A DNA stretch of 64,000 bases from Macrostomum lignano. Lineage: Eukaryota. The DNA is taken from the NCBI GenBank assembly GCA_002269645.1, contig NIVC01001678.1, positions 186,001 through 250,000 of the forward strand, given 5' to 3'. Shown here one piece after another: positions 4,766-31,935 of this stretch; the first letter of the stretch is position 1, and the number at the start of each line of letters is the position of its first letter. The notes beneath the pieces were generated by a model. That model saw only the letters and a program-made list of their open reading frames with translations, had not been told where the DNA came from and did no database searches. Both the position numbers and the translations under genes were made by a program.

Positions 4766-5032
4766 CTTCCTTCCTAGATCTGGTGCTATCGAACACCCAT
4801 GAATGCTAGATAGTGTGCACGTCTGACGGTTATAAAGTCAGGCCCGCTGTACACCCTGTGTGAGTGCTGTGCCTGCGTACAGCATTGGCGCGCTTGCATC
4901 CAACAGGCGATTTCAATAACCGAAATTTTAACCGCATGCTTTTGCTTTGCTTTTAAGCTGCAATTCCATTCCTTTGTTTGAATTTGTTCAGAAGTACCAC
5001 AATTCCTGGGGTTATGTTGCTGCCCCAGGCCA

Positions 5033-5884
<852 letters not shown>

Positions 5885-6966: not shown

Positions 6967-7225
6967 GCATGGCTGAGCTTCTCGCTCGCCGATAATCAGG
7001 GCTATTTTTAGGCATGCAAAAGCTTGTTCACGCATCACGTGCGTGTCGGTTGATTTCTCCAATCCTCTTGCTAACGGCGGTTTGGTTTCACTTCTCCTCA
7101 TTTCTTCTATTGGACGGTGGCAGCGCTGCCAATGGCAGTCAATTGTGACGCGAATGAGCAAAAATAGATAAATTCCAGCAAAATGCGGAGCTCTCCGCAT
7201 TCCACAGCACCGATACCGAGCCGAA

Positions 7226-8580
7226 ATGGAAGCTCTTTGGAGAATCCTGACAGCGATTGCAGCAGTTCTGATGCAGGCCTTCGGCAGGCCCGCAGGCCGA
7301 AGCGAGGACCTTGATGGCACTGAGCGGGAGATCCTGGCAGCCATTGTGTTCGAAAATGAAACAAAAATTTCACGCTACCTGCAGATGGCTTCTAACGTTG
7401 ATAAGCTCTTCAGCATGTCTGGGATAAGATTCACACCGCTTCACTTTGCATGTGAAATGGGAAACGTCAAAATTATCGAAATGTTCATTCAAGCCAGAGT
7501 TGACGTCAATCTTCAACGAAGCGATGGCTGCTCACCTCTGTACATTGCATCAGCGGAGGGTCACCACCAAGTTGTTTGCTCACTCATCAAAGCACAAGCT
7601 GACGTCAATCTTCAACGAAACACTGGCGAGTCACCTCTGTACATTGCATCACAGAATGGTCACCACCAAGTTGTGAGCTCACTCATCAAAGCACAAGCTG
7701 ACGTCAATCTTCCACAAAACACTGGCTCTTCACCTCTCTACATTGCATCACATTATGGTCACCACCAAAGTGTGTGCATACTCATCAAAGCACAAGCTGA
7801 CGTTAATCTTCAAAAAGTCTATGGCTGCTCACCTCTCTACATTGCATCACAGAATGGTTACCACCAAGTTGTGAGCTCACTCATCAAAGTACAAGCTGAC
7901 GTCAATCTTCAACAAGTCTATGGCTGCTCACCTCTCTACATTGCATCACAGAATGGTCACCACCAAGTTGTGAGCTCACTCATCAAAGCACAAGCTGACA
8001 TCAATCTTCAAGAAGTCGATGGCGACTCACCTCTCTGCATTGCATCACAGAATGGTTACCACCAAGTTGTGAGCTCACTCATCAAAGCACAAGCTGACGT
8101 CAATCTTCAAGCAGTCGATGGCTGCTCACCTCTCTACATTGCATCACAGAATGGTCACCACCAAGTTGTGAGCTCACTCATCAAAGTACAAGCTGACGTC
8201 AATCTTCAACATGTCAATGGCTGCTCACCTCTCTACACTGCATCACAGCAAGGTCATCACCAAATTGTAAGCTCACTCATTAAGGCACAAGCTGACGTCA
8301 ATCTTCAACGAAACGATGGCCGCTCACCTCTCTACATTGCATCAGCAAAGGGTCACCACCAAGTTGTGAGGTCACTCATCAAAGCACAAGCTGACGTCAA
8401 TCTTCAAGAAAACGTTCATGGCTCGTCACCTCTCTGGATTGCATCACAAAATGGTCACCACCGAGTTGTGAGCTCACTCATCAAAGCACAAGCTGACACC
8501 AAGGTTGAGCATATTCATTATCAAGAAGTCGCTGAAAACACATCTGCTGTGGAAGAGCCACCGAAAGAGTCACTATTTGG
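7226..8580 (+). CDS. Ankyrin-repeat exon V1 (hydrophobic N-terminus, N-cap, 11 ankyrin repeats); candidate alternative first exon of the ANK-cGLR gene, or a stand-alone 452-aa protein if unspliced (stop at 8584)
   Basis: 33-aa repeats G-x-SPLYIAS-xx-GHHQVVSSLIKAQADVNL; the ORF ends ...ESLFG, with the TAA inside TTTGG|GTAATT (donor at 8581, phase 2). Confidence 0.9.
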
Positions 8581-8748
8581 GTAATTTTCAGTCATTAGAT
8601 TTGTTTTCTTCATTTTTTCGTTTTTCATGTTTTTTCGTTTTTGATTCTTAATAACTTTTTTATTAGTTTTTACGGGTTCGAAGTAGATTGTATAATAGTA
8701 CCATCAAGTAGTAATGAGAGGCGGTTCTGTAAGGTGGAGCACCGCGCA

Positions 8749-8851
8749 AGTAGTATTGGTATATATTGAGAATGAACATCAAGTGAATGAGAGAACGTCA
8801 CAACCGAAGTGAGTGTGTATGGTCATCCTCAATATATACCAATAAACTACT
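8749..8851. mobile_element. ~100-bp MITE-like element with ~21-bp inverted termini; further copies at 9595-9695, 17103-17205 and 17943-18043
   Basis: AGTAGTATTGGTATATATTGAG ... CTCAATATATACCAATA(AA)CTACT around a shared core; two copies in each duplicated segment. Confidence 0.7.
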
Positions 8852-9911
8852 AAAAATATCTAGTTAGTGAAGCTGATGCAATAGGTAAAACAGCATCAGC
8901 AGCAAAGAACATATCTGATGCGAAGAAATCATACAGTAACATGTGTAAAGCAGGTGAGGAACTGGAATATATTAAAAAGAAACTTAGAGAAAAGGAAGCA
9001 AAGATAAGAATGCATGGAAGAAGAGCAGCAGATACAGTGTAGCCTCCCAATTAAACAAGGCTATTCAAGATATTGTTAAAATGGCTCGCTTCTAGGATCA
9101 ACAGAACAGTCTCAAGTATCTTCAAGACAAGGCAATGGTTTGAAGAAATTCTCACATAAAAAATGAGCGAGAAAAATACTGAAGCAAGACTTAATCGCTG
9201 TATTGGTGAAGGAACTTCACGATATGTCAACTATAAATATAGCAATTTTCTCGGTGTATTATAGACACTGTGGAGAGAATGAAAAAGTTCCCCTTTCCGA
9301 GTACAATAGTTGGAATGATAGGAATTTAAGGTTTTTAGTGGTGGCAGTGGCAGTGGCACTGCCATTTGTCAAAGTTGTTATGCTTTTATTTTATGATTGG
9401 AGTTTAAAGTTTTAAGGGTAGCTGAGATCACTACCTAGAAAATAGGGTTACATACAAAATCAGAATAGTTTGGAAACTGCCAGTGCCACTACCACATCTG
9501 CCACACACCTTGGGCTGTCCAAAGAGTGGTGCCACATGCCACCGAATTGGAATTTAAGGTTTTTTACAGACCCCTATTTTTTAAGATATTTTGTAGTAGT
9601 ATTGGTATATATTGAGGATGAACATCAAGTGAATGAGAGAACGTCACGACCGAAGGTAGTGTGTATGGTCATACTCAATATATACCAATACTACTCCCAC
9701 CCCACCTCCGGATGCCCTACCCAACCCCTAGCCTGCCCCACCCTGTTGTGTGTGTACTGTGTGCACTAATATCGCTATTCTATTGACTTCGTACTTTAGT
9801 GTACTACAGTGTCTACTAGTCTACTCACACCCCGACAATATATATCGGCTTGTTAACCCAGTGTCTGGGTCTAAGGGTTCTCGTAGCTTGCAACTAACAT
9901 GACTTAGCTTA

Positions 9912-10841
<930 letters not shown>

Positions 10842-12930: not shown

Positions 12931-13147
12931 AAGCGGCAGCGGAAGCGGCAGCGGAAGCGGCAGCGGAAGCGGCAGCGGAAGCGGCAGCGGAAGCGGCAGC
13001 GGAAGCGGCAGCGGAAGCGGCAGCGGAAGCGGCAGCGGAAGCGGCAGCGGAAGCGGCAGCGGAAGCGGCAGCGGAAGCGGCAGCGGAAGCGGCAGCGGAA
13101 GCGGCAGCGGAAGCGGCAGCGGAAGCGGCAGCGGAAGCGGCAGCGGA
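12931..13147. repeat. 12-bp repeat (AAGCGGCAGCGG), ~18 copies
   Basis: Direct periodicity; reads (AAAE)n, (GS)n, (LP)n or (AAAS)n depending on frame. Confidence 0.95.
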
Positions 13148-15603
13148 GTTCGTTGAGTTGCAGCCAGCAGAGATGCTTTCAGGCAGTAACTTGTCAACCA
13201 TATCCGTTGTTTCTGTCATTGCAGAAAACTCTGCTTCTTCTCGCTAAGCGGTCTACAGTGTCAGAGACAGTTCGGGCGATGATGGACTCCTGTTTGACTC
13301 CCGACCCACAGGCAGCTATCAACTTCAATGGAAGAGATATGCGGAGTCCAGCTCGTCTGGCAGGAGTTAATACAGCTTTAACTGATTAGGATTTGGGCTT
13401 CAAAGTTACACTCCTGAATTATTTTCAAGGTGGGAATCATTTCATTGTGCAATATCATGAGCTTTATGAGTCCGCTCAAACGGCATTCCAATAATTCTCA
13501 AAAAACTTTGCAGAACTTTCATGCTGCAAGTTTTCGTAATTAAATCAGAAAAAAACTCAAACATGAATTTACTCCTAAATCAGCTACTGATGGTTGAAAT
13601 GTAATATTATTTAATACCTTTAGAGTTTGAATTATTCCTACATCTATCTATAAAACATTTATAAATATATAAATCTATCTATAAAAAACACACGCAGATG
13701 CCATCACGAGCTGTTTTGGACGAAGCCAAGCCAACAACGGCTAAGGTGCATGATATATGAAAAGACCAGTTGGATCGCGGTACGGACCGCTTAAAAGCGG
13801 CGTTACCGAGCAAGCCTGGCCAGAGACCCAGCGGGCACATCTATCTGCTACCGCCTGCACTACACCAGCAACCCCAACTCATCGGATCCACGCCACTGCT
13901 CACCAGGCGTCCAGCGCAACTGCAGCACCGGTGGACAGCAGAAAGCGTTAAGCATGTGCTGCAGGTGGGCATAGGTCAAAGAAGAATAAGCGTCAGTCGA
14001 TGCAATGCTTCGCCTATTCCCAGCAGGCCGACAATGACCCCGACGACGACCAGAATTGCACTAGCTCTAGCGACAGTGATGCAGAGAATTTGATGGATGA
14101 ACTAAGAGGAAATAGACGGAAATTATTTCAACTTTGAAAGCAGGGTCAGGTAACGTTTTGTCCTTAATTCCTTAATCCTTAATTTCACTTCACTTTGATA
14201 TGGATCCTTTTACAAATTAGGTAAATGCAAATTTACATATTCCTCAAGCATGAATCGTGGAGGTGTTTTCAAAATGGAAAATAAAGCGATTGCCCTTTAA
14301 TATTTCTGATATATTGTACTCGATTTTCTAATATTGACTGCCTTTGACTCTTACGAAATTGTAGGTTACAGTTATCATTAAAATCAAAGTTCATTGCAGC
14401 AGCAGGGCGGGGAGGAGCAGCAATGAACTTTGATTAATATGGCCCGTGGATACATACACCGGTATTTAGTTCCTTCCTACTACAAGTAGAGTAAATAGGA
14501 TTTACGTTGTTATTATTAATTCGACTGTCGAAGGGCGCAGGGTAAACGTAGTTGCCCCGACTGGACAAATTTTGCGCCAGTGCGCTAGACGCGCATCGAA
14601 GGGGCGTAAGATAAAACGTATGTTGAGACGTATAGAAATTGCTCCACTGGGTAAGAGATTGGTGTGTAAGAGATGTAAGTAGAAGTGGTGAGGTTTTCAT
14701 GTACAGTTTTGTGCAGAAAGGAATAGTTGTCAATAGCGACTAGGTGGGCATTGAAGTGACACATTTACGCTCTAGAAAGCTCCCATCCAGATTGAATGTA
14801 TTCTAACCAACGAATGCGCTCCAACTAGCAAAAGCTGAGGACACGACCCCAACTCAACCAATGAAAAACTGTTACGTACCATCCAATGCGATCAAGACTG
14901 AAAAGTACTATAAAAGCTTATGTTAACCAAGCAAGAAGCTCGCCCCTCTCCTCGCCCTAGCCTCTCTTTCGCCTCTCTTCTCCCTTCTCGCTATTCTAAC
15001 TACTTTTGATTAACACAGCTAGGGTCTCAACCCAAACACTAAAACTGATAAATTGACTCACTAAAACTAAAACAACAACCAACCCACGTTCCACAATAGA
15101 CGGAACCTTCGGTTCACCCGAACACTTAGAAACCCCTTGGAACTCGAACAAAACGAGCTTCTTATTTGGAATTCCATCTTAGGCATTATATTTTGTAAGA
15201 TACCATCTCGAGATTGTGACCATCAAATACAACGGTCTGTAAGTTACCATCAAGTGTTTGCATCATCAGGAAAAGTCAGTTGAATCCGCCGCCTTAGTTA
15301 TTTGGCTCTCACATTGATATTTGAAGTAGAACAAGAGCCATAGAAGTGAGAGACCAGAAGAAGAACAATGCCATAAATTTTAAAATATTTCAGTATGAGA
15401 TTTTGAGTACTGTTGAATCCACGTATAGGCAACGTAGTTCCCTTTTCCGAGAACAATAGAAGCTGTTCATTTAGACATAAAGCAAGTTCCCCTTTCAAGT
15501 ACAATAGACTCTTTGAGAGTACACACATGGCAAGTTCCCTTCTCAAAAAATACCAGCAAAATGCGGCGCTCCCCGCATTCCACAGCACCGATACCGAGCC
15601 AAA

Positions 15604-16934
15604 ATGGAAGCTCTTAGGAGAATATTGACAGCGATTGCAGCAGTTCTGATGCAGACCTTCGGACTTGATGAGACTAAGCCGGAGATCCTGAAAGACATTC
15701 GGTTCGGAAACACAAGAAAAATTTCGCGATACCTACAGAATCCTTCTAACGTTGATAGGCTCTTCAGAATCAATGCGATGACAATCTCACCGCTTCACTT
15801 TGCATGTGAAATGGGAAAAGTGAAAATTGTCAAAATGTTTATTCAAGCCAAAGCTGACGTCGATCTTCAACAAAGCGATGGCTGCTCACCTCTCTACATT
15901 GCATCAGCGGAGGGTCACCACCAAGTTGTGAGCTCACTCATCAAAGCACAAGCTGACGTCAATCTTCAACGAAACAATGGCGAGTCACCTCTCTACATCG
16001 CATCAGCGAAGGGTCACCACCAAGTTGTGAGCTCACTGATCAAAGCACAAGCTGACGTCAATCTTCAACAAGTCGATGGCTGCTCACCTCTCTACATTGC
16101 ATCGCATTATGGTCACCACCAAGTTGTGAGCTCACTGATCAAAGCACAAGCTGACGTCAATCTTCAAAAAGTCTATGGCTGCTCACCTCTCTACATTGCA
16201 TCACAGAATGGTTACCACCATATTGTGAGCTCACTCATCAAAGCACAAGCTGACGTCAATCTTCAACAAGTCGATGGCTGCTCACCTCTCTACATTGCAT
16301 CACAGAATGGTCACCACCAAGTTGTGAGCTCACTCATCAAAGCACAAGCTGACATCAATCTTCAAGAAGTCGATGGCGACTCACCTCTCTGCATTGCATC
16401 ACAGAATGGTTACCACCAAGTTGTGAGCTCACTCATCAAAGCACAAGCTGACGTCAATCTTCAAGCAGTCGATGGCTGCTCACCTCTCTACATTGCATCA
16501 CAGAATGGTCACCACCAAGTTGTGAGCTCACTCATCAAAGTACAAGCTGACGTCAATCTTCAACATGTCAATGGCTGCTCACCTCTCTACACTGCATCAC
16601 AGCAAGGTCATCACCAAATTGTAAGCTCACTCATTAAGGCACAAGCTGACGTCAATCTTCAACGAAACGATGGCCGCTCACCTCTCTACATTGCATCAGC
16701 AAAGGGTCACCACCAAGTTGTGAGGTCACTCATCAAAGCACAAGCTGACGTCAATCTTCAAGAAAACGTTCATGGCTCGTCACCTCTCTGGATTGCATCA
16801 CAAAATGGTCACCACCGAGTTGTGAGCTCACTCATCAAAGCACAAGCTGACACCAAGGTTGAGCATATTCATTATCAAGAAGTCGCTGAAAACACATCTG
16901 CTGTGGAAGAGCCACCGAAAGAGTCACTATTTGG
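15604..16934 (+). CDS. ANK-cGLR fusion gene, exon 1 (ankyrin exon V2, 11 repeats)
   Basis: Same architecture as V1; the ORF stop TAA (16936-16938) lies inside donor GG|GTAATT at 16935, phase 2, matching the acceptor at 19453. Confidence 0.85.
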
Positions 16935-18350
16935 GTAATTTTCAGTCATTAGATTTGTTTTCTTCATTTTTTCGTTTTTCATGTTTTTTCGTTTTTGATT
17001 CTTAATAACTTTTTTATTAGTTTTTACGGGTTCGAAGTAGATTGTATAATAGTACCATCAAGTAGTAATGAGAGGCGGTTCTGTAAGGTGGAGCACCGCG
17101 CAAGTAGTATTGGTATATATTGAGAATGAACATCAAGTGAATGAGAGAACGTCACAACCGAAGTGAGTGTGTATGGTCATCCTCAATATATACCAATAAA
17201 CTACTAAAAATATCTAGTTAGTGAAGCTGATGCAATAGGTAAAACAGCATCAGCAGCAAAGAACATATCTGATGCGAAGAAATCATACAGTAACATGTGT
17301 AAAGCAGGTGAGGAACTGGAATATATTAAAAAGAAACTTAGAGAAAAGGAAGCAAAGATAAGAATGCATGGAAGAAGAGCAGCAGATACAGTGTAGCCTC
17401 CTAATTAAACAAGGCTATTCAAGATATTGTTAAAATGGCTCGCTTCTAGGATCAACAGAACAGTCTCAAGTATCTTCAAGACAAGGCAATGGTTTGAAGA
17501 AATTCTCACATAAAAAATGAGCGAGAAAAATACTGAAGCAAGACTTAATCGCTGTATTGGTGAAGGAACTTCACGATATGTCAACTATAAATATAGCAAT
17601 TTTCTCGGTGTATTATAGACACTGTGGAGAGAATGAAAAAGTTCCCCTTTCCGAGTACAATAGTTGGAATGATAGGAATTTAAGGTTTTTAGTGGTGGCA
17701 GTGGCAGTGGCACTGCCATTTGTCAAAGTTGTTATGCTTTTATTTTATGATTGGAGTTTAAAGTTTTAAGGGTAGCTGAGATCACTACCTAGAAAATAGG
17801 GTTACATACAAAATCAGAATAGTTTGGAAACTGCCAGTGCCACATCTGCCACACACCTTGGGCTGTCCAAAGAGTGGTGCCACATGCCACCGAATTGGAA
17901 TTTAAGGTTTTTTACAGACCCCTATTTTTTAAGATATTTTGTAGTAGTATTGGTATATATTGAGGATGAACATCAAGTGAATGAGAGAACGTCACGACCG
18001 AAGGTAGTGTGTATGGTCATACTCAATATATACCAATACTACTCCCACCCCACCTCCGGATGCCCTACCCAACCCCTAGCCTGCCCCACCCTGTTGTGTG
18101 TGTACTGTGTGCACTAATATCGCTATTCTATTGACTTCGTACTTTAGTGTACTACACTGTCTACTAGTCTACTCACACCCCGACAATATATATCGGCTTG
18201 TTAACCCAGTGTCTGGGTCTAAGGGTTCTCGTAGCTTGCAACTAACATGACTTAGCTTATTTCACTCCGGCCCGCCCCACCCCACCTCCGGCCGGCCCCA
18301 CCCCACCTCCGGCCTGCCCCACCCCACCTCCGGCCTGCCCCACTTCAACC

Positions 18351-19151
18351 GGGGAGGCTTCACAAGCGCTAATTTTCATAACCGCTAACTCACCTACTTT
18401 CACAAGCGCTAAACTTCACAAGCGCTAAACTTCATAACTCACTTTCACAAGCGCTAAACTTCACAAGCGCTAAACTTCACAATAGCTACAAATTCGCCAC
18501 CTACTTTCACAAACGCTAAATTTCACAAGCGCTAAACTTCAGAATAGCGAAACCACCTACTTTCACAAGCGCTAAACTTCACAAGCGCTGAACTTCACAT
18601 TAGATACAAATTTGTCACCTACTTTCACAAGCGCTAAACTTCACAAGCGCTAAACTTCACAACCGCTAAAACACAAATGTCGCCTACTTTCACAAGCGCT
18701 AAACTTCACAAACGCTAAACCTCACAACCGCTAAAACACAAATGTCGCCTACTTTCACAAGCGCTAAACTTCACAAACGCTAACCTTTACAATCCCCAAA
18801 ACACGAATGTCGGTTTCTTTTACAAGCGCTAAAATGTTAATTTACTACATATACTAATATACTAATACTAATATACTATACTAATATACTAATATACTAT
18901 TTTAGCGCTTGTGAAAGTAGCCGACATTCGTATTTTAGCGGTTTTTAACGTTTAGCGTTTGTGAAGTTTAGCGCTTGTGAAGTTTAGCGATTGTAAAAGT
19001 AGGCGACATTTGTGTTTTAGCGGTTGTGAAGTTTAGCGCTTGTGAAAGCAGGTGGTTTCGCTATTATGAAGTTTAGCGCTTGTGAAGTTTAGCGCTTGTG
19101 AAAGTCAATGTCGTTAGCGGTTATGAAAATTAGCGCTTGTGAAAGCGACCC
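18351..19151. mobile_element. Second foldback-type element, inside intron 1 of the ANK-cGLR gene
   Basis: Arms of TTCACAAGCGCTAAAC repeats in inverted orientation around an AT-rich spacer (18841-18900); termini GGGG...CCC; direct repeat CTTCAACC at 18343-18350 and 19152-19159. Confidence 0.85.
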
Positions 19152-19453
19152 CTTCAACCTACCGCCTGCCCCACTTCACCTCCAGGACTAAAATCTAAAG
19201 TCTCATCCTTATCGCTAAATCATTCCATTTCCTACCTGCCAGCCATACAACAGACACTCTACATGGAAAGTCATTTAAAATTCGACAATTTTTCAGGAAC
19301 AAAACATGCAAACATTTGCTCTAAACTAAACTTAAAGGTTCAACTGCCTTCAATCAATTCATGCACTGTTCGGGAGAGCTGCCCTGTGCTACACAAATTA
19401 TTCTGTTAACCCTTCTTGAAGTGCACGTTTTTCACCAACAACTCACATTTTAG

Positions 19454-19803
19454 ATTCAGTCCCAGCGACTCAGAGCTGAGCGAGCAGCTGCACTCAGCAC
19501 TGGAGCAGTCAGGCTTCACCGAATCCCGAGCCGCATTGCAGAGCGCGGCTGCTGATGCCCTGCAGCAGATTCTGAGAAGTCGATTCAGATACGATGTCTT
19601 TTTTATCGTCGGCAGCTACTCAGAAGGCTGGGGCAACAGCCTGACGACACTGGACGGCAGAACTGACGCCCATTCCGACATTGATGTGATGCATTTGATT
19701 CCCGGCCGAAAATACCACCAGAGAGGCCTGTGCGAGTGCGATGGAGCTCCGGAGCAGCACGAGTTGGTGAACGGGCACATTCAGTGCTGCTCTGCAGGAT
19801 TGC
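19454..19803 (+). CDS. ANK-cGLR fusion gene, exon 2 (nucleotidyltransferase core: GSYSEG...SDID)
   Basis: Acceptor TTTTAG| at 19453 (phase 2; AGs at 19459 and 19465 are the same phase); peptide FFIVGSYSEGWGNSLTTLDGRTDAHSDIDVM carries the Pol-beta-superfamily GS and DxD motifs; donor C|GTGAGT at 19804 (phase 1). Confidence 0.85.
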
Positions 19804-20406
19804 GTGAGTTCTCTCTTGGGAAGTGAACTGGTCTGTAAGGTCTGTTAGTGATTGCTTGAGACTCTCGTAGTGCTGAAGTCTTCTTTTTGTGTGCAAAGCA
19901 TTGGTAGATTATGTGTAAAATGACAAGCGAAGGCAATTGCCGCCTAAAACTAAGTAAAGGGGAAAACCCGGAAAGTTAACAAAACACGGAACATATTTGA
20001 TGAGTGATAAAATATTATTTAGTATTGAAAGTGCAAATTGACAGTAGAAGTTATTGTTTCAGAAGGTTCACAAAAAAATGGTTCAACCATGTCCTTGAGT
20101 TCTGTGTGCTGGTGTTGGTCTATTCTGGCAAGAATGTAAGAAAACTTGACAAGATTTTTTGTGTCAAATTTGAGTTGCATTGGTAAAAGAGGAGCAACAC
20201 AATGAAGGGTTCTGTGAAAAATTGCGCTTTCAGCAGTTTTTTGCAGTTTTTGGCAAGAAAGGTTCGCATCAAGGGAATTTTGTGTCATTTGGTTGAGCAG
20301 TTTTAGTATGTTTGGGTCAGCTGCATATTGCTCAATCAGTACAAAGCATCACTGCACATACTCAGAGCTGTATTTTGCCTCATCTGGAACTCAATCGTTT
20401 TTACAG

Positions 20407-21884
20407 CCTCCAATCCTGCTCATGCGACACCCGGATTCACACTGAGGCCAGCGCTGGACGATGTCTCCGCGTGCCATCTCTGCCGCTACCCGCCCATCAC
20501 GCCGCTGCTGCCAAACCGCGTCTCGAACATCCCCCCTCGGGTCCTGGAGGCTCTCCAGAAGGTTCTCACCTCCGCCTTATCGCCCTGCCACGTTGTGCAC
20601 GCAGCCTCTCCTGACCGAGGTGGCGAAGAGCTCCGCGTGAGCACCAGCTTCCTGGAGAACCGGATGCTGCGAAGTCTCTCTACCCTGCAAGGTCAACTGT
20701 TCGTCACACTCAAATACCTGGTCAAGAAGGTCATCTGTCACAAGAATGGCTTCAATCAGCAAGGCTTGAAGTCCTACCACGTGAAGACCATCACCTTCCG
20801 AATGCTGGACGAGACGCCGGTCGAGCAGTGGAAGAAGGAGAACCTCGTGAGTCTCACGAGACAGTCGCTGCAGATGCTGCTCGACTGTGTGGAGAAGAGC
20901 CGAGAGCAGGACAGACAAACACCTGACACACCTGACCGATCTCGGGGTCGCATCATGAATCATTTCTTTCTCAGCGATGCGGCCATCTACCTCAAGGGTG
21001 CGGACAAGGAGAGAGTGGACCAGCATTTAGACGGCATCATGAGCACACTGAGAACAGTAATCTATCGGCTGCCCCAACTGCTGCAGCAGTTCATCGGCAG
21101 TCTCAGACCTGTGAGCGACTCAGGCACATTCTACTTCCACCCGTTCCAAATCCTGCGGCTGCCGGATCTGAGGCCGACGCCCCTCACGGAGTCCAATACT
21201 CTCGAGTACCATCAGATCTACGACGTGGTGAGAGAGTGTCTGGTGCGTCTCTCTTGCAGTGACTGCAGCCCGCGATCTCAGGAGTCGCTCACAGAGCTGA
21301 TTGCCAGACTCCCAGACTGCGCCCTCTCAGCACGGGAGGCTCTCAGAGCGCTGGCTTGCCTGAAGTTCGGCTACCGAGGAACTGCAGAGAGAGTCGTGAG
21401 CTTGTGCTCAGGTCACTCGGTGAGCAGAGGCATCGCTTGGTCTCGTGAGAAGTCGGCGACTGAAGCGACTGTGGAGTTCGTGATGCAGCATCTGAGCAGC
21501 CGCGACTCGGCGTGGAAGTTCTGCTTTCGGTTCGACCAGCGACCGAAACTCGAATTCTTGACAGGAGATCTGAGGGAGTGCTTTCCCCTCCGGTTGTCAT
21601 TCAGTGCTGACTATTTCTACATGAACTTTGACGCTCTGCTGTGGGCTCTGCGGCTTGAGCTGCGGACTGATGGAGAAGCGCGCGCTCAAGACTGGATCCG
21701 GGATGTGGCGGAGAGAGAGGACTCGGATGAGCAGGAGCTGCTGGTTGCCGCTTTTTATACTTCGAATCCGGAGCTGCTCAAGGAAATAATAAAGAAGCTG
21801 AAGGTGATGAAAGCAGTTCTTCGTGATGGGCTGAAGAAGAGACTGCTGGAAAAATGGCCATTTTTAAGGGCTGAATGGCAGTAA
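20407..21884 (+). CDS. ANK-cGLR fusion gene, exon 3 (rest of Mab-21/cGAS-like domain plus C-terminal helical region)
   Basis: Acceptor TTTTTACAG| at 20406 (phase 1). Peptides LDDVSAC (candidate third acidic residue), ELRVSTSFLENRML, LKYLVK and LKSYHVKT match Mab-21/cGLR hallmarks. Full CDS 1331+350+1478=3159 bp = 1052 aa plus stop. Confidence 0.88.
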
Positions 21885-22042: not shown

Positions 22043-22048
22043 AATAAA
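22043..22048 (+). promoter_or_regulatory. Polyadenylation signal AATAAA of the ANK-cGLR gene
   Basis: About 160 bp after the stop and followed by U-rich sequence. Confidence 0.5.
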
Positions 22049-23102
22049 GTTAACCAATTCTGCTTTCCTTTTGCACTCTTGTGTTTTAAATCATTCCAAT
22101 TCCTATTCACCTTGCTCTAGTAAAAATATTTAAATAATTCACAAAATTATTGCAAGACTTTTAAATATTTATTTCGCTTTGTTGAAATGTTCCCATAATC
22201 GTTTTCAGCTTCTTTCGTCAATATTTAATTTAATTATTTGTTATTGGTGTCCTGTTACTCACATTCATGAAAATTCCATCTAAGGAAGAAGTGCACTGTT
22301 TGAATTTTACTTTCCATGCTTCATTTAAAAATTAGAGTTTAGTCAGTCAGTGTAAGCCCTCGTTTCCTTTGTTCTGATTAGCTTAATCTCTTTGGAGTTT
22401 ACACTTAAGATCGCCTATGGCTGTAATCTCCTTGAACACAATTGAAGACTTGATTTCTTATCCAAACAGAGATATCAGTAACTACGGGGGCGAAGGCTAG
22501 ACGGTTAGACTTAGCGGATTACTCTGGTTGCGTTAGAGCATCTGGTCTCCGCTTGTCAACCGTCCAGGTCAAGTTGCCGCCTCGCCTTTGATGTCTGTCT
22601 GAAATTGATGAGAGCTGCTGTAGCTTTGCCATGCGCTGCGTGCACTATTGTAGGCTCAGTCTATTTGCCCTTTCTATTGTTCTTGTTTTCCCATGCCTGC
22701 TCTAAGTTTAACTCTTACAGCCCCTATAGGCCTTACTTTTGTAGGCTGAAACTTCTAAATTTCTGAGCCGTATATCACTTCCCCCTTTTTGAAGTCCTTG
22801 CGTAGCAGCAGGATTTCCATCTTGCCTTCTCCTGGTGTGCGCTCTGACTTTTGTGAAACTGAAATTAATGGGGGTTAGAAATTCGCGGCGAAGTGCAGCT
22901 GCGAACTATCGTATTAAAGAAGAGGAAATATTCATCAAGAGGAATAATTGTTATATCAATATTGAATAGTGGCTACAGAAAAATGTAGCCAAGGCCTTAA
23001 AATCAGTCTTGCGTGTTCAATCCTTTGCTTTTCGGAGAGACAGAAGGTAGCGGACAAAACCTAAAAAAATATCCGCTATAGTCAGTCAGTCGGTCAGTCA
23101 GT

Positions 23103-24375
23103 CATTCTGGGGCTCCAATGCATTCTGGGACAATCTGGGGCTCCAATGCATTCTGGGCCAATCTGGGGCTCCAATGCATTCTGGGACAATCTGGGGCTCC
23201 AATGCATTCTGGGACAATCTGGGGCTCCAATGCATTCTGGGACAATCTGGGGCTCCAATGCATTCTGGGCCAATCTGGGGCTCCAATGCATTCTGGGCCA
23301 ATCTGGGGCTCCAATGCATTCTGGGCCAATCTGGGGCTCCAATGCATTCTGGGCCAATCTGGGGCTTCAATGCATTCTGGGCCAATCTGGGGCTCCAATG
23401 CATTCTGGGACAATCTGGGGCTCCAATGCATTCTGGGCCAATCTGGGGCTTCAATGCATTCTGGGACAATCTGGGGCTCCAATGCATTCTGGGCCAATCT
23501 GGGGCTCCAATGCATTCTGGGCCAATCTGGGGCTCCAATGCATTCTGGGACAATCTGGGGCTCCAATGCATTCTGGGCCAATCTGGGGCTCCAATGCATT
23601 CTGGGCCAATCTGGGGCTCCAATGCATTCTGGGCCAATCTGGGGCTCCAATGCATTCTGGGCCAATCTGGGGCTCCAATGCATTCTGGGCCAATCTGGGG
23701 CTCCAATGCATTCTGGGCCAATCTGGGGCTTCAATGCATTCTGGGACAATCTGGGGCTCCAATGCATTCTGGGCCAATCTGGGGCTCCAATGCATTCTGG
23801 GACAATCTGGGGCTCCAATGCATTCTGGGCCAATCTGGGGCTCCAATGCATTCTGGGACAATCTGGGGCTCCAATGCATTCTGGGCCAATCTGGGGCTCC
23901 AATGCATTCTGGGCCAATCTGGGGCTCCAATGCATTCTGGGACAATCTGGGGCTCCAATGAATTCTGGGCCAATCTGGGGCTCCAATGCATTCTGGGCCA
24001 ATCTGGGGCTCCGTGGATTCTGTGGCTCCAGTGGATTCTGGGGCTCCAGTGGATTCTGGGGCTCCAGTGCATTCTGGGGCTCCAGTGCATTCTGGGGCTC
24101 CAGTGCATTCTGGGGCTCCAGTGGATTCTGGGGCTCCAGTGCATTCTGGGGCTCCGTGGATTCTGGGGCTCCAGTGCATTCTGGGGCTCCAGTGCATTCT
24201 GGAGCTCCGTGGATTCTGGGGCTCCGTGGATTCTGGGGCTCCAGTGCATTCTGGGGCTCCGTGGATTCTGGGGCTCCAGTGCATTCTGGGGCTCCAGTGG
24301 ATTCTGGGGCTCCAGTGCATTCTGGGGCTCCGTGGATTCTGGGGCTCCAGTGCATTCTGGGGCTCCAGTGGATTC
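23103..24375. repeat. Compound minisatellite: 28-bp unit (CTGGGGCTCCAATGCATTCTGGGCCAAT) to ~24010, then related 17/18-bp unit (CTGGGGCTCCAGTGCATT)
   Basis: Direct periodicity; the long ORFs on both strands are repeat artefacts. Confidence 0.95.
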
Positions 24376-25537
24376 CTGGAACTGCAGATGGGCGTCAAAA
24401 ACCCCGGCGGCAAAAAAACTGCATGGCGCGAGAATCTTATAAAGTGGAGCACAGAAAATTGCAGGTCAATTTCATGTACCCGATTCTATCTCTACTTCCG
24501 TTGCGCATATATTTGTCGAATCTTGGTAATGGAAATTTTTCAGTACTTTTAATTACAAGCAGCTTTCAAAGTTTTTAAACATTCAATTTTATATTCCAAA
24601 ATCGAACTGTGATGGGGCTTTTAGGACAGACTTGGCCACTGCCTCCATAATCCCATCAATTCTATCTGCATTCTTCCCAAAGAAATCTGGGAAAAAAAGC
24701 GTCCACTTAGTTCGAGAATCCTCCAACAATATAATTTTACTCGCGGATTGCTTAATTCCCCAATAAATGACTTTTACAAAAATTTACATCGAAAAATTAG
24801 AATAAAAAAATTGCCAGCTGTTTCACAAGATTCCCACTATGAACGTCACGGGCCTCATTGCAAATCCAGAAAAAAAGAATTTCTTGGCCAAAATTCATAA
24901 GTTCCCGCGCAGGCAACGCATAGGTAAGTCTGGTACCGTGAGCTGAGCTGGTCTGTCCCCCGCATTCAGTGAGTCATCTGGAACAAAATCTTTGATTTTC
25001 CCGCAGCTCTCCAACGCATGCTAGAAAAAATCTGCAGCTCTGGGCTCATGCAGCTGCTGCAGTGCTCACTTCTCTCTGCCTGCACACACAGCTCCCCACA
25101 CACTCTTGTTGCAGCCCCCCAATAAACCTTGCAAACTTAATTCTGCTCCTATTTTCAGAATATTCTCAACGTCTGAGCATTTTATTTTGTCAGCACGAGA
25201 AAAAACCGGATCATAAACTAAATTGCGAAGCATCTGCTCAAGAAAAAGTGAGGCTGCCATAAAGCTGACTCAGCCGGAAAAAAGTCACTGTGTTTCCATT
25301 TTTTCTCTTGTGAGAAATCTCTTGCTATTTCTTTCTCTTTCTGTTTCCCTTCTCGCAAGCCAGTCTATAGTCGGTATGTAAGCTTCAGATGCACGCAAAG
25401 GTCAACAGAATCAAATGGGAAAACGTCTTGTCTATGGCTTAAAGTGGCCGAGAATTTGCTTTGGTCACGGAGGAAATTCCGTGCAACTTGAAGTCCCGTG
25501 TGTCTCGACCTCTTCATGCAAATGTCGTTTATAAGTT

Positions 25538-28032: not shown

Positions 28033-28259
28033 AGCAGTGGAAGAAGGAGAACCTCGTGAGTCTCACGAGACAGTCGCTGCAGATGCTGCTCGACTGTGTG
28101 GAGAAGAGCCGAGAGCAGGCCAGACAAACACCTGACACACCTGACCGATCTTGGGGTCGCATCATGAATCATTTCTTTCTCAGCGATGCGGCCATCTACC
28201 TCAAGGGTGCGGACAAGGAGAGAGTGGACCAGCATTTGGACAGGCGCGTCATGAGCACA
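28033..28259 (+). pseudogene. Duplicated internal fragment of cGLR exon 3 (copy of 20824-~21047)
   Basis: Near-identical QWKKENLVSLTRQSLQMLLDCVEKSREQ...ERVDQHLD peptide; truncated at both ends. Confidence 0.85.
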
Positions 28260-29194
28260 AATGTTCTCACAAGTACTACTAACAGTAAAGACTCAATTCG
28301 GCAGATGTTTTTTGCTATTTCACTATCGAGGTATCTGCTATCGATATGCGTAGGTTTTACTGCTGTCTACCCGGTGTTAAACATTGATTCCGGAGGCCTC
28401 AGACAGCTCCAGACGCATCTCATGAAGACTGACAAACCTCGAGTGAAGAGAATGCGAGCATAAAATTTTTATCGTTAATGCCTAGCATTTTGAGCACTCC
28501 TTGTGTGACTTTACAAATAGAGTCCGGCATCAAAGGAACAGCGAGTCCTTTAGGTCCTTTCCACCCTGACAATGGGACCACCAAGTATTTTCTTTGGAAA
28601 AGCTATCTTATGGTTTAAACTACGGCTCTGAATAAGTAAAAGTACGAGTTTTTGTTTAATAATTTTGAATGTACTTTACAGTATTTTCTTATTAGCCTGT
28701 TTTTCGTTTGATGTAGGCCGACAACACCGTAACACCGCAGCTCCCCAATTTACAGATTGGGGCGAGAAAGTTTTTTCGCAGCTGTGGTTTTATACATAGT
28801 ACTGTCAGTAACAAGCAAAGACTTGTAGGCAAACATGCGGACCATTGCAGCTGAAGCATTGTTCGGATGATTTGCGTTTTCACATCTTTAACTTATTCAC
28901 AGGGCCTGCAACCTAAATATACCCATGACTTATGAGTACAAAAGTTAAATTCTTCATATGGAAGAGAAGGGCAGGGAGAGCCAACTCAAAATTCCAAACT
29001 ATCCATTGCATTTCAGTTTTGTCAACGAAGAAAAAGTCAAACTTTTCTTTTGGTTATTTTAGTTTTTTTCTGCAAGCTGAAATTAAAGTTTTTCTAAAGC
29101 AACAACTATTGCGCGAAGAGATTTGCATTTGAAATGATTTTTTGTGATGACAGCAAGAATAATTTTATGTCATTCATCTGAGTAGAAACGATTG

Positions 29195-29549
29195 ACTGCA
29201 TGACTGAGTGCATGACTGAGTGCATGACTGAGTGCATGACTGAGTGCATGACTGAGTGCATGACTGAGTACATGACTGAGTGCAGAACTGACTGCATGAC
29301 TGAGTGCATGAATGAGTGCATGACTGAGTGCATGACTGAGTGCATGACTGACTGCATGGCTGACTGCATGGCTGAGTGCATGACTGAGTGCATGACTGAG
29401 TGCATGACTGAGTACATGACTGAGTGCAGAACTGACTGCATGACTGAGTGCATGAATGAGTGCATGATTGAGTGCATGACTGACTGCATGACTGACTGCA
29501 TGGCTGACTGCATGACTGAGTGCATGACTGAGTGCAGAACTGACTGCAT
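29195..29549. repeat. 12-bp repeat (TGCATGACTGAG)
   Basis: Direct periodicity. Confidence 0.95.
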
Positions 29550-29708
29550 TTCATTTCTGTCTCTCTTTTCCTCTTTCAATTCCCAATGCATTTTCTCTAC
29601 AAGTTTTAGGGTCTTTAACTCACTTAAAAAATAACACAGACATCACTGATGCAATCAAAGGGAAACTAGGAAGTGGGTTTTAATCAATTCTTATTCAAAA
29701 TTCTTTAG

Positions 29709-30263
29709 CAGGGAAGAGGAAAGGATAAAAAGGGAGAGGAAAGGATAGAAAGGGAGAGGAAAGGATAGAAAGGGAGAGGAAAGGATAGAAAGGGAGAGGA
29801 AAGGATAGAAAGGGAGAGGAAAGGATAGAAAGGGAGAGGAAAGGATAGAAAGGGAGAGGAAAGGATAGAAAGGGAGAGGAAAGGATAGAAAGGGAGAGGA
29901 AAGGATAGAAAGGGAGAGGAAAGGATAGAAAGGGAGAGGAAAGGATAGAAAGGGAGAGGAAAGGATAGAAAGGGAGAGGAAAGGATAGAAAGGGAGAGGA
30001 AAGGATAGAAAGGGAGAGGAAGGGATAGAAAGGGAGACGAAAGGATAGAAAGGGAGAGGAAAGGATAGAAAGGGAGAGGAAAGGATAGAAAGGGAGACGA
30101 AAGGATAGAAAGGGAGAGGAAGGGATAGAGAGGGAGAGCAAGGGATAGAGAGGGAGAGGAAGGGATAGAGAGGGAGAGCAAGGGATAGAGAGGGAGAGGA
30201 AGGGATAGAGAGGGAGAATAAGGGATAGAGAGGGAGAGGAAGGGATAGAGAGGGAGAATAAGG
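29709..30263. repeat. 20-bp purine-rich minisatellite (GGGAGAGGAAAGGATAGAAA), left part
   Basis: Direct periodicity; the same family resumes at 31343. Confidence 0.95.
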
Positions 30264-31342
30264 TGATGTGTTCCTTATTACCCGACTTTTGGTAATCAAG
30301 GAACACTCACTTCTAGCTCAGTAGCTAGGCAACCCAGTACGTCAACAGAAGGTATTCAATTACCTTGAGTCCTTAACTGAGAGCTCTCGTCAATACTCCT
30401 TATTCGTTGATCTCGTTATCAGTAGCGTTCCTGTCCTTCAGGAATTCCGGGCGCCGGTCAACAGTTGATCTGGTCCGCTCTTGCAATTGTCTCCTTGACT
30501 TCTTGCCGGCCGGTTATCTGTAGTTCGGACCAATCGGAAGCTTCCAAATTAACAATGGGTACCCTGCGCCAAACTGCGGTTTAATATAAGCCTACTCCTT
30601 CTAGTAGTGCCTCTATGCACTCTAGGTATGGCTCCGGAAACCACTGATAGTCTTCTAAGATCTATCAGGGGCAGTCCTTCTGGAGACTGCAACCAGTAGA
30701 GTCTAAACAGACTCAGGAGTCTCAACAGACTCACAAATAACCTCAAGTCACTCTTAGACTTGAGCGAGACGTCTCAACCAACAGGCGCAAATGAGTAAGG
30801 CTTACCACAAGAACTCGACCACGTCTTCGAGTTGCTTCAGGAAGTCTGCTGCAGAGCTTCCTCTTCGGAGCTTTCTCTCTCGGAGAATTGTGGCTCCGGG
30901 TCCGTTCCGGACCACTTGTATTTATAGGCAAATGGACCCCCATGAGGTCACGTGGGTCCAACTCTTCAACTGTCAAAAAGGTCACGGTTTGGTTGCTGTC
31001 AAACATGGCAGGGTAGAAAGTTACTCCATTGGTTTAGTGTAAAAGCGCGTGATTTGTCATCGCATTCGAGTTATTTTTAGTTACATTTGATTGGTTCACG
31101 TGCGTACGGTTGAATGATGCATCTTTCCTGGGGTTTGCGTTCGACAAGTACAGGTCACACGTGATTGGGTGATTTCTAAATTTAGCATGCTCAAGGTCTC
31201 TCTCTTTCTATTGGTTAGTCAGAATATACTTATAATTCAAAGCATACCTTTATTCATGCTCTTCAACTTACTACTGAATAAAATGTGTGAGTAGTACGTT
31301 AACACTTTTATGTCTTTTTTACGGGAGGTAGAACACTCTACA
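30264..31342 (-). mobile_element. Probable solo LTR (~1079 bp) inserted into the 20-bp satellite
   Basis: TG...CA termini, AAGG on both flanks (4-bp TSD, weak evidence inside a repeat), TATAAATA on the minus strand at 30919-30926; no coding capacity. Confidence 0.6.
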
Positions 31343-31902: not shown

Positions 31903-31935
31903 AAGCTGTGATAACTTTGATAACTGAGGCAATAG

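What the first reader, a model, noticed from the sequence alone, without database searches (positions are those of the whole stretch)
15604..21884. Hidden ankyrin-repeat / cGAS-like receptor fusion gene
Seen: three ORFs that look separate join in frame through GT-AG sites with matching phases (2 then 1) into about 1052 aa: hydrophobic N-terminus, 11 ankyrin repeats, linker, nucleotidyltransferase core (GSYSEG, SDID, candidate third Asp in LDDVSAC), Mab-21 helical part (LKSYHVKT) and about 230 aa of C-terminal helical sequence. Established: cGAS-like receptors make cyclic dinucleotides for STING, are expanded in several invertebrate groups, and characterised ones sense nucleic acids. Inference: here a diversified protein-binding array may gate the enzyme, allowing detection of protein or other non-nucleic-acid ligands. 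Repeat-domain fusions to cGLRs may already be in databases; I cannot check novelty.
Basis: partly seen in the sequence, partly recalled or inferred. Interest (0 to 1): 0.9.

Follow-up and report, generated by a model that had tools for sequence, protein, structure and literature searches.

The report
Flatworm ankyrin-repeat cGAS-like receptor gene
The three reading frames do join into one intact gene for an ankyrin-repeat protein fused to a cGAS-like enzyme, but it is one more copy of a large Macrostomum flatworm gene family that a 2023 survey of cGAS-like receptors had already catalogued.

Summary
Observation confirmed. Exons 15604-16934, 19454-19803 and 20407-21884 join in frame through GT-AG introns (phases 2 and 1) into 1052 aa. 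The protein has a conserved hydrophobic N-terminus, 11 ankyrin repeats, a Mab21/cGAS-type nucleotidyltransferase core (G497-S498, D519-x-D521, D578) and a 242-aa C-terminal domain.

The window is Macrostomum DNA. All close relatives are M. lignano proteins, the best 87% identical. Paralog gene models carry ANK and Mab21 in one polypeptide. One spans junction 1 with the same length, and both intron positions and phases recur in two M. lignano loci. Exon 2 has no usable start codon, and the spliced-leader ATG would be out of frame.

A model of the 87%-identical relative hits cGAS first. Of 99 family cores, 91 keep all five catalytic positions.

It is not new as a kind. Li et al. 2023 list ANK-cGLR as a named architecture, tabulate M. 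lignano ANK-cGLRs, and cloned five (NTase part only). The ligand-gating idea is untested. It fits the variation between repeats, which sits on the canonical binding surface, and the neutral core (pI 7.3).

The C-terminal domain matches no known fold, and whether Macrostomum has STING is unknown.

Verdict: new member of a known kind, of moderate-to-low interest.

The parts
15548..15603 (+). Conserved 5' leader just upstream of the start codon. It begins at ...CCAG|CAAAATGCGG, a possible trans-splice or exon acceptor.
   Evidence: Similarity between copy B, copy A (7170-) and the fragment at 32926- begins here. The short upstream ATG is out of frame. Its role as an acceptor is inferred only.
15604..16934 (+). 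Exon 1: aa 1-443 plus two bases of codon 444. It holds the N-terminal hydrophobic segment, a capping repeat-like stretch, 11 ankyrin repeats and a linker.
   Evidence: ORF, Pfam Ank with 11 stretches, donor GG|GTAATT. The N-terminal motif M..L.R.L.A.AA..L..FG is shared with M. lignano P0007, P0008 and P0021.
15604..15663 (+). N-terminal hydrophobic or amphipathic segment MEALRRILTAIAAVLMQTFG.
   Evidence: Conserved in paralogs and in copy A. Its function is unknown: a signal-peptide-like, membrane-binding or capping helix could not be told apart with these tools.
15772..16863 (+). Array of 11 ankyrin repeats. Ten are spaced exactly 33 aa apart and the last is offset by one residue. The DNA is a 99-bp tandem repeat, 10.1 copies, 89% matches.
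   Evidence: 47% of the between-repeat entropy lies in the 6 positions that are randomised in designed ankyrin binders (expected 18%, permutation p about 0.001).
16935..19453 (+). Intron 1: 2519 bp, phase 2, GT...AG. It contains a 21-bp minisatellite (18265-18343) and inverted arrays of a 16-bp unit (18359-19143).
   Evidence: An intron with the same position and phase occurs in M. lignano L001 and L002.
19454..19803 (+). Exon 2: the N-terminal half of the nucleotidyltransferase core. G497-S498 are at 19611-19616, D519 at 19677-19679 and D521 at 19683-19685.
   Evidence: The first in-frame Met is residue 79 of this exon, after the GS motif at residue 53.
19804..20406 (+). Intron 2: 603 bp, phase 1, donor GC|GTGAGT, acceptor TTTACAG|CC.
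   Evidence: Same position and phase in L001 and L002.
20407..21884 (+). Exon 3: the rest of the NTase core (third acid D578 at 20457-20459), the Mab21 helical lobe (Pfam Mab-21_C about 20706-20900), the C-terminal domain and the stop codon.
21156..21881 (+). C-terminal domain of 242 aa, specific to this Macrostomum family, fold unassigned.
   Evidence: AlphaFold2 on the window's own sequence gave pLDDT 84.8 and pTM 0.85. No Pfam family matched. There was no significant PDB or viral fold match, best E 0.74 and 0.49. Every database hit to it that was looked up is M. lignano; the exception is P0029, a family member covering most of this domain, labelled bacterial and probably contamination.
22043..22048 (+). 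AATAAA, a candidate polyadenylation signal 159 nt after the stop codon.
   Evidence: Read directly from the sequence. Not tested.
7170..9995 (+). Partial duplicate of the gene's 5' end. It holds an intact second ANK exon (7226-8581, 452 aa, same donor) and 1.4 kb of intron 1, with no Mab21 exons behind it.
   Evidence: The identity is mosaic: about 100% against 16274-18343 but only 77-93% against 15548-16273. It could be an alternative first exon, an orphan copy or an assembly artefact; this is undecided.

Best explanation
The region is one intact three-exon gene of a Macrostomum flatworm (M. lignano or a very close relative). It encodes a 1052-aa protein with four parts: a conserved N-terminal hydrophobic segment, 11 ankyrin repeats, a cGAS/Mab21-type nucleotidyltransferase, and a 242-aa family-specific C-terminal domain.

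It belongs to a large lineage-specific expansion of ANK-cGLR genes that evolves by tandem duplication, gene conversion and decay.

Most likely mechanism (inferred, not shown): the protein is a cytosolic pattern-recognition-type enzyme. The variable concave face of the ankyrin array binds a ligand, more probably a protein or another non-nucleic-acid molecule than dsDNA or dsRNA. That binding controls the NTase active site (GS loop, D519/D521/D578). The enzyme then makes a nucleotide second messenger for a downstream receptor, which would be STING if Macrostomum has one.

Shown here: gene structure by homology, domain make-up, fold, conservation of the catalytic residues, and the location of repeat variability. 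Inferred: enzymatic activity, the ligand, gating by the ANK array, the role of the C-terminal domain, and the downstream receptor.
For: Gene structure:
- The exons join in frame through canonical splice sites.
- Paralog proteins span the junction.
- Intron positions and phases are conserved in L001 and L002.
- Exon 2 has no start codon before the GS motif.
- The M. lignano spliced leader ends in ATG (PMC8629364). Joined to exon 2 it reads out of frame and stops after 34 codons.

Family and fold:
- Pfam Mab-21_C scores 24.5 bits against a 24.1 cut-off.
- A family profile hits cGAS chains in the PDB at E 5.5e-7.
- hhalign to the human cGAS C-lobe gives 79% probability.
- The AlphaFold2 model of the 87%-identical relative has pLDDT 82 and pTM 0.84.
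- Foldseek places cGAS first (E 1.7e-5, probability 1.0), then MAB21L1, MB21D2, Sp-cGLR1, MiD51 and CdnE.

Active site:
- G, S, D, D and D are invariant in 10 paralogs down to 33% identity.
- All five are kept in 91 of 99 family cores.

Sensor array:
- 47% of the between-repeat entropy lies in 6 canonical binding positions (p about 0.001).
- dN/dS between repeats is 1.77 at surface codons and 0.61 at framework codons.
- ANK repeat number varies from 1 to 17 across the family.
- The core has pI 7.3, against 9.1 for the cGAS catalytic domain. Li et al. report that nucleic-acid-sensing cGLRs are more positively charged.

Precedent:
- Li et al. 2023 curated M. lignano members of this family as cGLRs.
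Against: - No transcript evidence was available, so the splice is inferred.
- The strict search motif h[QT]GS...h[DE]h is not met. The protein has V-G-S and L-D-D, and the GS-to-DxD spacing is 20 residues, the top of the allowed range.
- The geometry of the acidic triad could not be measured. No coordinates are returned, and the model is of an 87% relative, not of the window protein.
- The main text of Li et al. names no Macrostomum enzyme among its 15 characterised active cGLRs. Their constructs lacked the ANK part.
- dN/dS against the nearest M. lignano gene is high: 0.71 overall and 0.88 in the C-terminal domain. That also fits relaxed constraint in a redundant family.
- Other flatworms studied lack both cGAS and STING (PMC13563047, PMC10855445). 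Whether Macrostomum has STING could not be established.
- The surface-codon set used for dN/dS was partly chosen after seeing the data, and repeats within one gene are not independent.
Confidence: 0.7

Rival explanations
1. Two separate transcription units: an ANK-only gene ends at 16938, and an independent Mab21 gene starts at exon 19454, for example by spliced-leader trans-splicing within an operon. Under this reading no fusion protein is made.
For: [quoted passage not shown] The ANK ORF has its own in-frame stop at 16936-16938 if unspliced. The nearest M. lignano models P0001, P0003 and P0004 are annotated without ANK. Intron 1 is long (2.5 kb) and full of repeats.
Against: Exon 2 starts in codon phase 2 and has no in-frame Met before the GS motif. 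The SL's own ATG is out of frame and stops after 34 codons. P0001 is flagged 'partial', and its upstream 9 kb is a satellite array, so the absence of an ANK exon there says little. P0002 and P0015 (86-87% identical) do read from ANK into the Mab21 part. Complete paralog models are fusions. The acceptor is TTTTAG, not the [T/C]TNCAG motif enriched at trans-splice sites.
Confidence: 0.07
2. A real fusion gene whose Mab21 part is a non-catalytic scaffold, as in MiD49/MiD51 or MAB21L1. The ANK and C-terminal domains would mediate protein assembly, and no second messenger would be made.
For: The strict cGLR regex is not met, and a 10-residue insertion lengthens the GS loop. Foldseek also hits MAB21L1, MB21D2 and MiD51 with probability 1.0. 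No Macrostomum enzyme is named among the active cGLRs in Li et al..
Against: Catalytic G, S, D, D and D are kept in 91 of 99 family cores, across paralogs only about 33% identical. That is hard to explain without selection for catalysis or at least for nucleotide and metal binding. The best fold hits are catalytic cGAS structures.
Confidence: 0.15
3. A young, redundant copy that is drifting towards pseudogene status in a birth-and-death family. It is intact by recency rather than by function.
For: dN/dS is 0.71 at dS 0.094 against the nearest M. lignano gene. Gene fragments of the same family lie nearby at 28033-28259 and 32926-33347, and an orphan ANK exon lies at 7226-8581. The 5' flank of this copy differs from that of the other two copies beyond -56.
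Against: All 1052 codons are open, both introns keep canonical sites, and all catalytic residues are intact. With about 124 substitutions separating it from P0001 and no stop codon, nonsense changes appear to have been removed by selection (inference). High dN/dS is also expected for immune receptors.
Confidence: 0.08

Closest known systems
ANK-cGLR fusion proteins catalogued by Li et al. 2023 (PMC9980059), including M. lignano PAA86972.1, PAA45980.1, PAA57558.1, PAA93208.1 and PAA68676.1, and the Stylophora pistillata ANK-cGLRs
   Same: Same architecture: N-terminal ankyrin repeats followed by a cGAS-like NTase. For the M. lignano entries it is also the same gene family. Their sequences carry the same GSxxEGWGNSLxxLxGxT...DxD loop and C-terminal extension.
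   Different: The window gene is a different paralog or ortholog; the best database match is 87% identical. None of these fusions has a known ligand or product. The cloned constructs began at the NTase part, so the ANK array has not been tested.
Vertebrate cGAS (e.g. PDB 4K97, 6CT9)
   Same: Best structural match. The two share the Mab21 helical lobe (SYHVKT, HFF..D motifs), a GS loop, DxD and a third Asp.
   Different: Only about 15% identical. The core is neutral rather than basic. The GS-DxD loop is 10 residues longer. It has an ANK array and a 242-aa C-terminal domain, and lacks cGAS's disordered basic N-terminus. DNA binding is not predicted.
Non-catalytic or orphan Mab21 proteins (MAB21L1, MB21D2, MiD49/MiD51)
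   Same: Same fold, with Foldseek probability 1.0. MiD49/51 also use an N-terminal hydrophobic segment; that point is from my own knowledge.
   Different: The window protein and 91 of 99 relatives keep the full acidic triad and the GS motif. According to Li et al., the Mab21L1/2/3 genes lack a predicted functional active site.
Bacterial CD-NTases of CBASS (CdnE, CdnG)
   Same: Same NTase superfamily, with weaker fold hits at E 4e-3 to 0.5. Like them, its charge is neutral rather than basic.
   Different: The window gene is eukaryotic, has introns, and is fused to ANK repeats. It has no operon partner effector.

Membership tests
cGAS-like receptors (cGLR), criteria of Li et al. 2023 | Final curation criterion: a G[S/G] activation-loop motif plus an [E/D]h[E/D] X50-90 [E/D] catalytic triad | tested here: met
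   G497-S498, D519-I-D521, then 56 residues, then D578. The regex matches. These positions are invariant in 10 paralogs and all five are kept in 91 of 99 family cores.
cGAS-like receptors (cGLR), criteria of Li et al. 2023 | Strict search motif h[QT]GS X8-20 [DE]h[DE]h X50-90 h[DE]h | tested here: not met
   The regex fails. The residue before GS is Val, not Gln or Thr, and the third acid sits in L-D-D-V. Only flanking positions fail, and no catalytic residue is missing. The spacing of 20 is at the allowed limit. Li et al.'s own accepted M. lignano entry PAA86972.1 (..VMGS..) fails in the same way. I therefore treat this as a search heuristic rather than as grounds for exclusion.
cGAS-like receptors (cGLR), criteria of Li et al. 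2023 | Sequence homology across both the NTase core and the C-terminal helix bundle | tested here: met
   For the helix bundle: Pfam Mab-21_C 24.5 bits against a 24.1 cut-off, profile against PDB cGAS E 5.5e-7, hhalign 79%. For the N-terminal core there is no HMM alignment to cGAS; the evidence is motifs and fold only.
cGAS-like receptors (cGLR), criteria of Li et al. 2023 | [quoted passage not shown] | tested here: met
   The AlphaFold2 model of the 87%-identical M. lignano relative P0001 (pLDDT 82) has as top Foldseek hits mouse and human cGAS (E about 2e-5, probability 1.0, TM 0.50-0.57 on the target), and also Sp-cGLR1.
cGAS-like receptors (cGLR) | Synthesises a nucleotide second messenger on ligand binding | not testable with these tools
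   Needs recombinant protein and labelled NTPs.
cGAS-like receptors (cGLR) | Signals through a STING-type receptor encoded in the same genome | not tested
   No tool here can scan a Macrostomum genome. The literature found covers only planarians and schistosomes, which lack both proteins. Li et al.'s species table, as held, has no Macrostomum row.
Ankyrin-repeat proteins | Tandem 33-residue repeats that match the Ank profiles | tested here: met
   Pfam Ank with 11 stretches (E 2.5e-80) and Ank_2 (E 1.7e-100). The repeats are in exact 33-aa register.
Macrostomum ANK-cGLR-CTD expansion | N-terminal hydrophobic motif, ANK array, core with the long EGWGNSLxTLDGRT loop, and the family-specific C-terminal domain, encoded by three exons | tested here: met
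   A profile search gave 92 representatives with E below 1e-30; of the hits looked up, all with E below about 1e-19 were M. lignano.
Non-catalytic Mab21 proteins (MAB21L1/2, MiD49/51) | Mab21 fold with a degenerate active site | tested here: not met
   The fold is shared, but the active-site residues are intact and conserved. The gene is not filed here.

The most novel reading that the evidence does not exclude
The Macrostomum ANK-cGLR-CTD genes form a diversified family of receptors for protein or other non-nucleic-acid ligands. Hypervariable ankyrin surfaces, and possibly alternative ANK first exons such as 7226-8581 and 15604-16934 spliced onto one enzyme body, would supply the specificity. 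The structurally unassigned C-terminal domain would couple the enzyme to a downstream pathway that need not involve STING, in a phylum otherwise reported to have lost cGAS-STING signalling.
Probability: 0.15. Interest if true: 0.75.

Novelty: new member of a known kind. Interest (0 to 1): 0.33.

Why it matters
Only nucleic-acid ligands are known for cGLRs, and most catalogued cGLRs have no known activator. A family in which a variable ankyrin surface is wired to the enzyme is a natural place to look for a protein-sensing cGLR. Macrostomum lignano is a laboratory model with RNAi and transgenesis.

Two points here go slightly beyond the published catalogue. First, the family carries a conserved 242-aa C-terminal domain with no recognisable fold. 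Second, variation between repeats sits on the canonical binding face.

The specific gene is one of roughly a hundred paralogs, and its architecture is already in the literature. So the finding mainly confirms good reading of raw sequence rather than revealing a new system.

Tried and rejected
I used the 87%-identical M. lignano P0001 as first row instead, and the window's own exon-3 segment for the C-terminal domain. I did not try to get round the refusals.
- Single-sequence phmmer against the PDB gave only marginal cGAS hits (E about 0.05). The family profile was needed.
- hhalign and hmmsearch did not align the N-terminal catalytic half to cGAS. Residue-level equivalence of D578 with cGAS D319 therefore rests on motif order, model topology and my own reading, not on a computed alignment.
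- I looked for an ANK exon upstream of the closest M. lignano gene (L002). The 9 kb upstream is a roughly 120-bp satellite array, so this was uninformative. L002 never appeared in the script folder, so I pasted its sequence in by hand.
- The C-terminal domain was searched against Pfam, PDB folds and viral folds. Nothing was significant, only weak TPR-like helical noise.
- Literature searches for STING or cGAS in Macrostomum found nothing on Macrostomum itself.
- I ran no further search on a human STING query. Its word-based sensitivity and the flood of vertebrate hits would have made a negative result meaningless.
- I considered a signal peptide or membrane anchor for the N-terminus. The charge distribution around the hydrophobic stretch differs between paralogs, so I left it unassigned.

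Full report

Yes.

- The first ORF's stop codon (16936-16938) overlaps a donor: GG|GTAATT, with the exon ending at 16934.
- Acceptor TTTTAG|A places the next exon start at 19454. The split codon GG+A restores the frame of the second ORF.
- Donor GC|GTGAGT after 19803 and acceptor TTTACAG|CC before 20407 join the second and third frames through C+CC.
- The joined CDS is 3159 nt, 1052 codons and a stop.
- Pfam finds 11 ankyrin repeats (Ank E 2.5e-80, Ank_2 E 1.7e-100) in exon 1. In exon 3 it finds the Mab-21 helical domain, barely above threshold at 24.5 bits against 24.1.

**2. Where does the window come from, and is the splice supported?**

The Mab21 half retrieves only Macrostomum lignano proteins, apart from one 1-kb contig labelled bacterial. 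The best hit is 87% identical. At synonymous sites the window gene differs by dS 0.094 from the nearest M. lignano gene. The window is therefore M. lignano or a very close relative.

Several independent lines support the fusion.

- M. lignano P0002 (86% identical) reads ...SSALEKPPKEPEFECSLSDSELSEQ... across junction 1. This matches the window's ...TSAVEEPPKESLFGFSPSDSELSEQ... residue for residue in length.
- Complete NCBI models of paralogs (P0006, P0007, P0008, P0012, P0021; 53-58% identical) contain ANK repeats, the Mab21 core and the C-terminal part in one protein.
- Three of these start with the same kind of hydrophobic N-terminus as the window protein.
- In locus L001 (P0007) and locus L002 (P0001) the two introns lie at the same codon positions with the same phases, 2 and then 1.
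- Exon 2 cannot start a protein. Its first in-frame Met is residue 79, after the GS motif at residue 53.
- M. lignano trans-splices about 30% of its genes with a leader that ends in ATG (PMC8629364). That ATG joined to 19454 reads out of frame and stops after 34 codons.

What is missing is RNA evidence. None of the tools holds any.

**3. What the enzyme part is**

A profile of 12 family members hits only cGAS chains, Sp-cGLR1 and MAB21L1 in the PDB sequence set, the best at E 5.5e-7.

The tool would not accept the spliced window protein. I therefore modelled the 87%-identical P0001, which gave pLDDT 82 and pTM 0.84. Foldseek against the PDB puts mouse and human cGAS first (E about 2e-5, probability 1.0). 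MAB21L1, MB21D2, Sp-cGLR1, MiD51 and bacterial CdnE follow.

The model topology is the NTase one. Strand FFVV is followed by G-S at the start of a short helix. A long loop leads to a strand that begins D-I-D, and a later strand carries the third Asp.

In an alignment of ten paralogs down to 33% identity, G53, S54, D75, D77 and D134 of the Mab21 part are invariant. These are G497, S498, D519, D521 and D578 of the whole protein. In 99 family cores taken from the large searches, 91 keep all five.

Li et al. 2023 curated cGLRs by three things: a G[S/G] loop, an [E/D]h[E/D] X50-90 [E/D] triad, and predicted structural homology. The window protein meets these. It does not meet their stricter search regex. 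Val precedes GS, and the third acid sits in L-D-D-V. The GS-to-DxD spacing of 20 is the maximum allowed, because of a conserved 10-residue insertion (EGWGNSLxTLDGRT). At least one M. lignano protein that they accepted fails the strict regex in the same way.

I could not measure the geometry of the triad, because no coordinates are returned.

**4. The sensor-like part**

The 11 repeats are in exact 33-residue register and are about 89% identical at the DNA level.

- The differences between them are not spread evenly. 47% of the positional entropy falls in positions 2, 3, 5, 13, 14 and 33. From my own knowledge (Binz et al. 2003), these are the positions randomised in designed ankyrin binders because they form the target-binding face. 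The expected share is 18% and the permutation p is about 0.001.
- Between-repeat dN/dS is 1.77 at positions 1, 2, 3, 5, 13 and 14, against 0.61 in the framework. That position set was partly chosen after seeing the data, and repeats within one gene are not independent. It is an indication, not proof, of diversifying selection.
- Across the family the number of detectable ANK repeats upstream of the enzyme ranges from 1 to 17.
- The enzyme core has zero net charge (pI 7.3), against 9.1 for the human cGAS catalytic domain. Paralog cores range from 6.0 to 9.2.
- Li et al. report that nucleic-acid-sensing cGLRs are more positively charged than auto-active ones.

They do not demonstrate it.

**5. 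The C-terminal domain**

The last 242 residues (21156-21881) fold confidently on the window's own sequence (pLDDT 84.8, pTM 0.85) into a mixed helical domain with short strands.

It has no Pfam match. It has no significant match among PDB structures (best E 0.74) or predicted viral structures (best E 0.49). Every database hit to this part that I looked up is M. lignano; P0029, labelled bacterial, also covers most of it (section 8). Its role is unknown. It evolves faster than the core, with dN/dS 0.88 against 0.58.

**6. Family and neighbourhood**

The profile search of 1.84 billion representatives gave 92 hits with E below 1e-30. All of those I looked up were M. lignano. Bivalve and annelid proteins appear only at about 1e-16 to 1e-25, and only over the Mab21 core.

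The window shows the family's turnover.

- A 2.8-kb segment (15548-18343) is duplicated at 7170-9995. The copy holds a second intact ANK exon (7226-8581) with the same donor, but no Mab21 exons follow it.
- The duplicate is mosaic: about 100% identical over 16274-18343 and only 77-93% over the first five repeats.
- It ends at a 21-bp minisatellite.
- Fragments of the Mab21 part (28033-28259) and of the N-terminus (32926-33347) lie further on.

**7. Comparison with what is known**

Li et al. 2023 (PMC9980059) surveyed about 3,000 cGLRs.

- 87% are single-domain. The paper explicitly lists ankyrin- and TPR-repeat fusions as architectures (Fig. 1C) and notes ANK-cGLRs in the coral Stylophora.
- Its Table S2 lists M. 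lignano proteins with N-terminal Ank_2 domains.
- Its Table S3 shows five M. lignano proteins of this very family cloned for the biochemical screen.
- Those constructs begin at the NTase part, for example GFSERSARAQ..., which is equivalent to the window's GFTESRAALQ.... The ANK arrays were therefore left out.
- No Macrostomum enzyme is named in the main text among the 15 characterised actives.

The architecture, and even the genus, is thus already on record. What remains unknown is ligand, product and pathway.

Planarians and schistosomes are reported to lack both cGAS and STING. I found nothing on STING in Macrostomum.

**8. Other things seen**

- Intron 1 contains inverted arrays of a 16-bp unit (18359-19143).
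- M. lignano model P0072 joins ANK, the cGLR core, more ANK repeats and a caspase domain in 2111 aa. It could be a real immune or death-type fusion, or a merged gene model.
- P0029, labelled as a Kangiellaceae MAG protein, is a 42%-identical family member on a 1065-bp contig. It is probably eukaryotic contamination. If so, it suggests that the family exists in another marine animal.
- M. lignano model P0005 starts with MQSQRLRAERAAALS..., which is exon 2 read out of frame. This looks like an annotation error in a public model.
- An exon at 56543-57655 encodes poly-Q tracts and the first half of an HMG box (Pfam E 6.6e-9).
- Much of the window is satellite or minisatellite DNA.

**9. Verdict**

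The gene is a new member of a known, already catalogued kind. The mechanism proposed is reasonable and now has some circumstantial support, but it is untested. Interest is moderate to low (0.33). The most novel reading still open is a diversified, possibly STING-independent family of protein-sensing cGLRs with a new C-terminal domain. I give that about 15%.

Noticed in passing
window 7170-9995: A second, intact ANK first exon (7226-8581, 452 aa, identical donor) plus 1.4 kb of intron, with no Mab21 exons after it. Its identity to the studied gene is mosaic: about 100% over 16274-18343 and 77-93% over the first five repeats. This could be gene conversion, an alternative first exon or an assembly artefact.
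   Followed up: partly
window 9917-10016 and 18265-18343; L002 about 9600-9670: The same 21-bp minisatellite (CTCCGGCCTGCCCCACCCCAC) marks the end of the duplicated segment in both copies. A related tract lies in intron 1 of the M. lignano paralog, so it may be a recombination hotspot.
   Followed up: no
window 18359-19143: Intron 1 contains inverted arrays of a 16-bp unit (TTCACAAGCGCTAAAC). Weakly related sequence lies at 6368-6966, upstream of copy A.
   Followed up: no
window 28033-28259 (ORF 28056-28463): An isolated fragment of the Mab21 helical lobe, 96% identical to 20824-21047. It diverges after ...VDQHLD, so it is a gene relic.
   Followed up: partly
window 32926-33347 (+) and 32237-33127 (-): A fragment of the family's 5' leader and N-terminus (76% identical) overlaps a minus-strand ORF. 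The far end of that ORF reads like the tail of a retroelement integrase (…GQAERFVQVLKRHL…). It has no Pfam hit.
   Followed up: partly
window 56543-57655 (+): An exon encoding poly-Q and poly-G tracts and the first half of an HMG box (Pfam HMG_box E 6.6e-9; [18 protein letters not shown]...). It is probably a TCF/LEF- or Sox-type transcription factor gene.
   Followed up: partly
window 778-1377, 4786-5900, 12931-13147, 23098-24578, 29106-31932, 36498-37352, 39533-40237, 43518-43940, 46868-48227, 48500-49108, 50257-50778, 52506-53963: A large share of the window is satellite or minisatellite DNA. It produces long spurious ORFs in several frames on both strands.
   Followed up: no
M. lignano protein P0072 (PAA93319.1, 2111 aa): This model joins ANK repeats, the cGLR core (aa 1019-1575), more ANK repeats and a caspase domain (Peptidase_C14, E 2.8e-27). 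It is either a real sensor-to-protease fusion or two merged genes.
   Followed up: no
protein P0029 (347 aa, 1065-bp contig labelled Kangiellaceae bacterium MAG): A 42%-identical member of this animal gene family sits in a bacterial metagenome bin. It is probably eukaryotic contamination, and if so it suggests that the family exists in another marine animal.
   Followed up: no
M. lignano protein P0005 (UniRef A0A1I8FXA2): Its N-terminus MQSQRLRAERAAALSTGA... is exon 2 read in the wrong frame from an ATG at the exon start. This looks like an annotation error in a public model.
   Followed up: partly
L002 about 8700-9300, probably extending over 1-9300: The closest M. lignano paralog has a roughly 120-bp satellite array directly upstream of exon 2. 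Only 8700-9320 was read. The extent is inferred because 1-10000 holds only two ORFs of 50 aa or more, both at 9534-9808. This explains why that gene is annotated as 5'-partial.
   Followed up: partly
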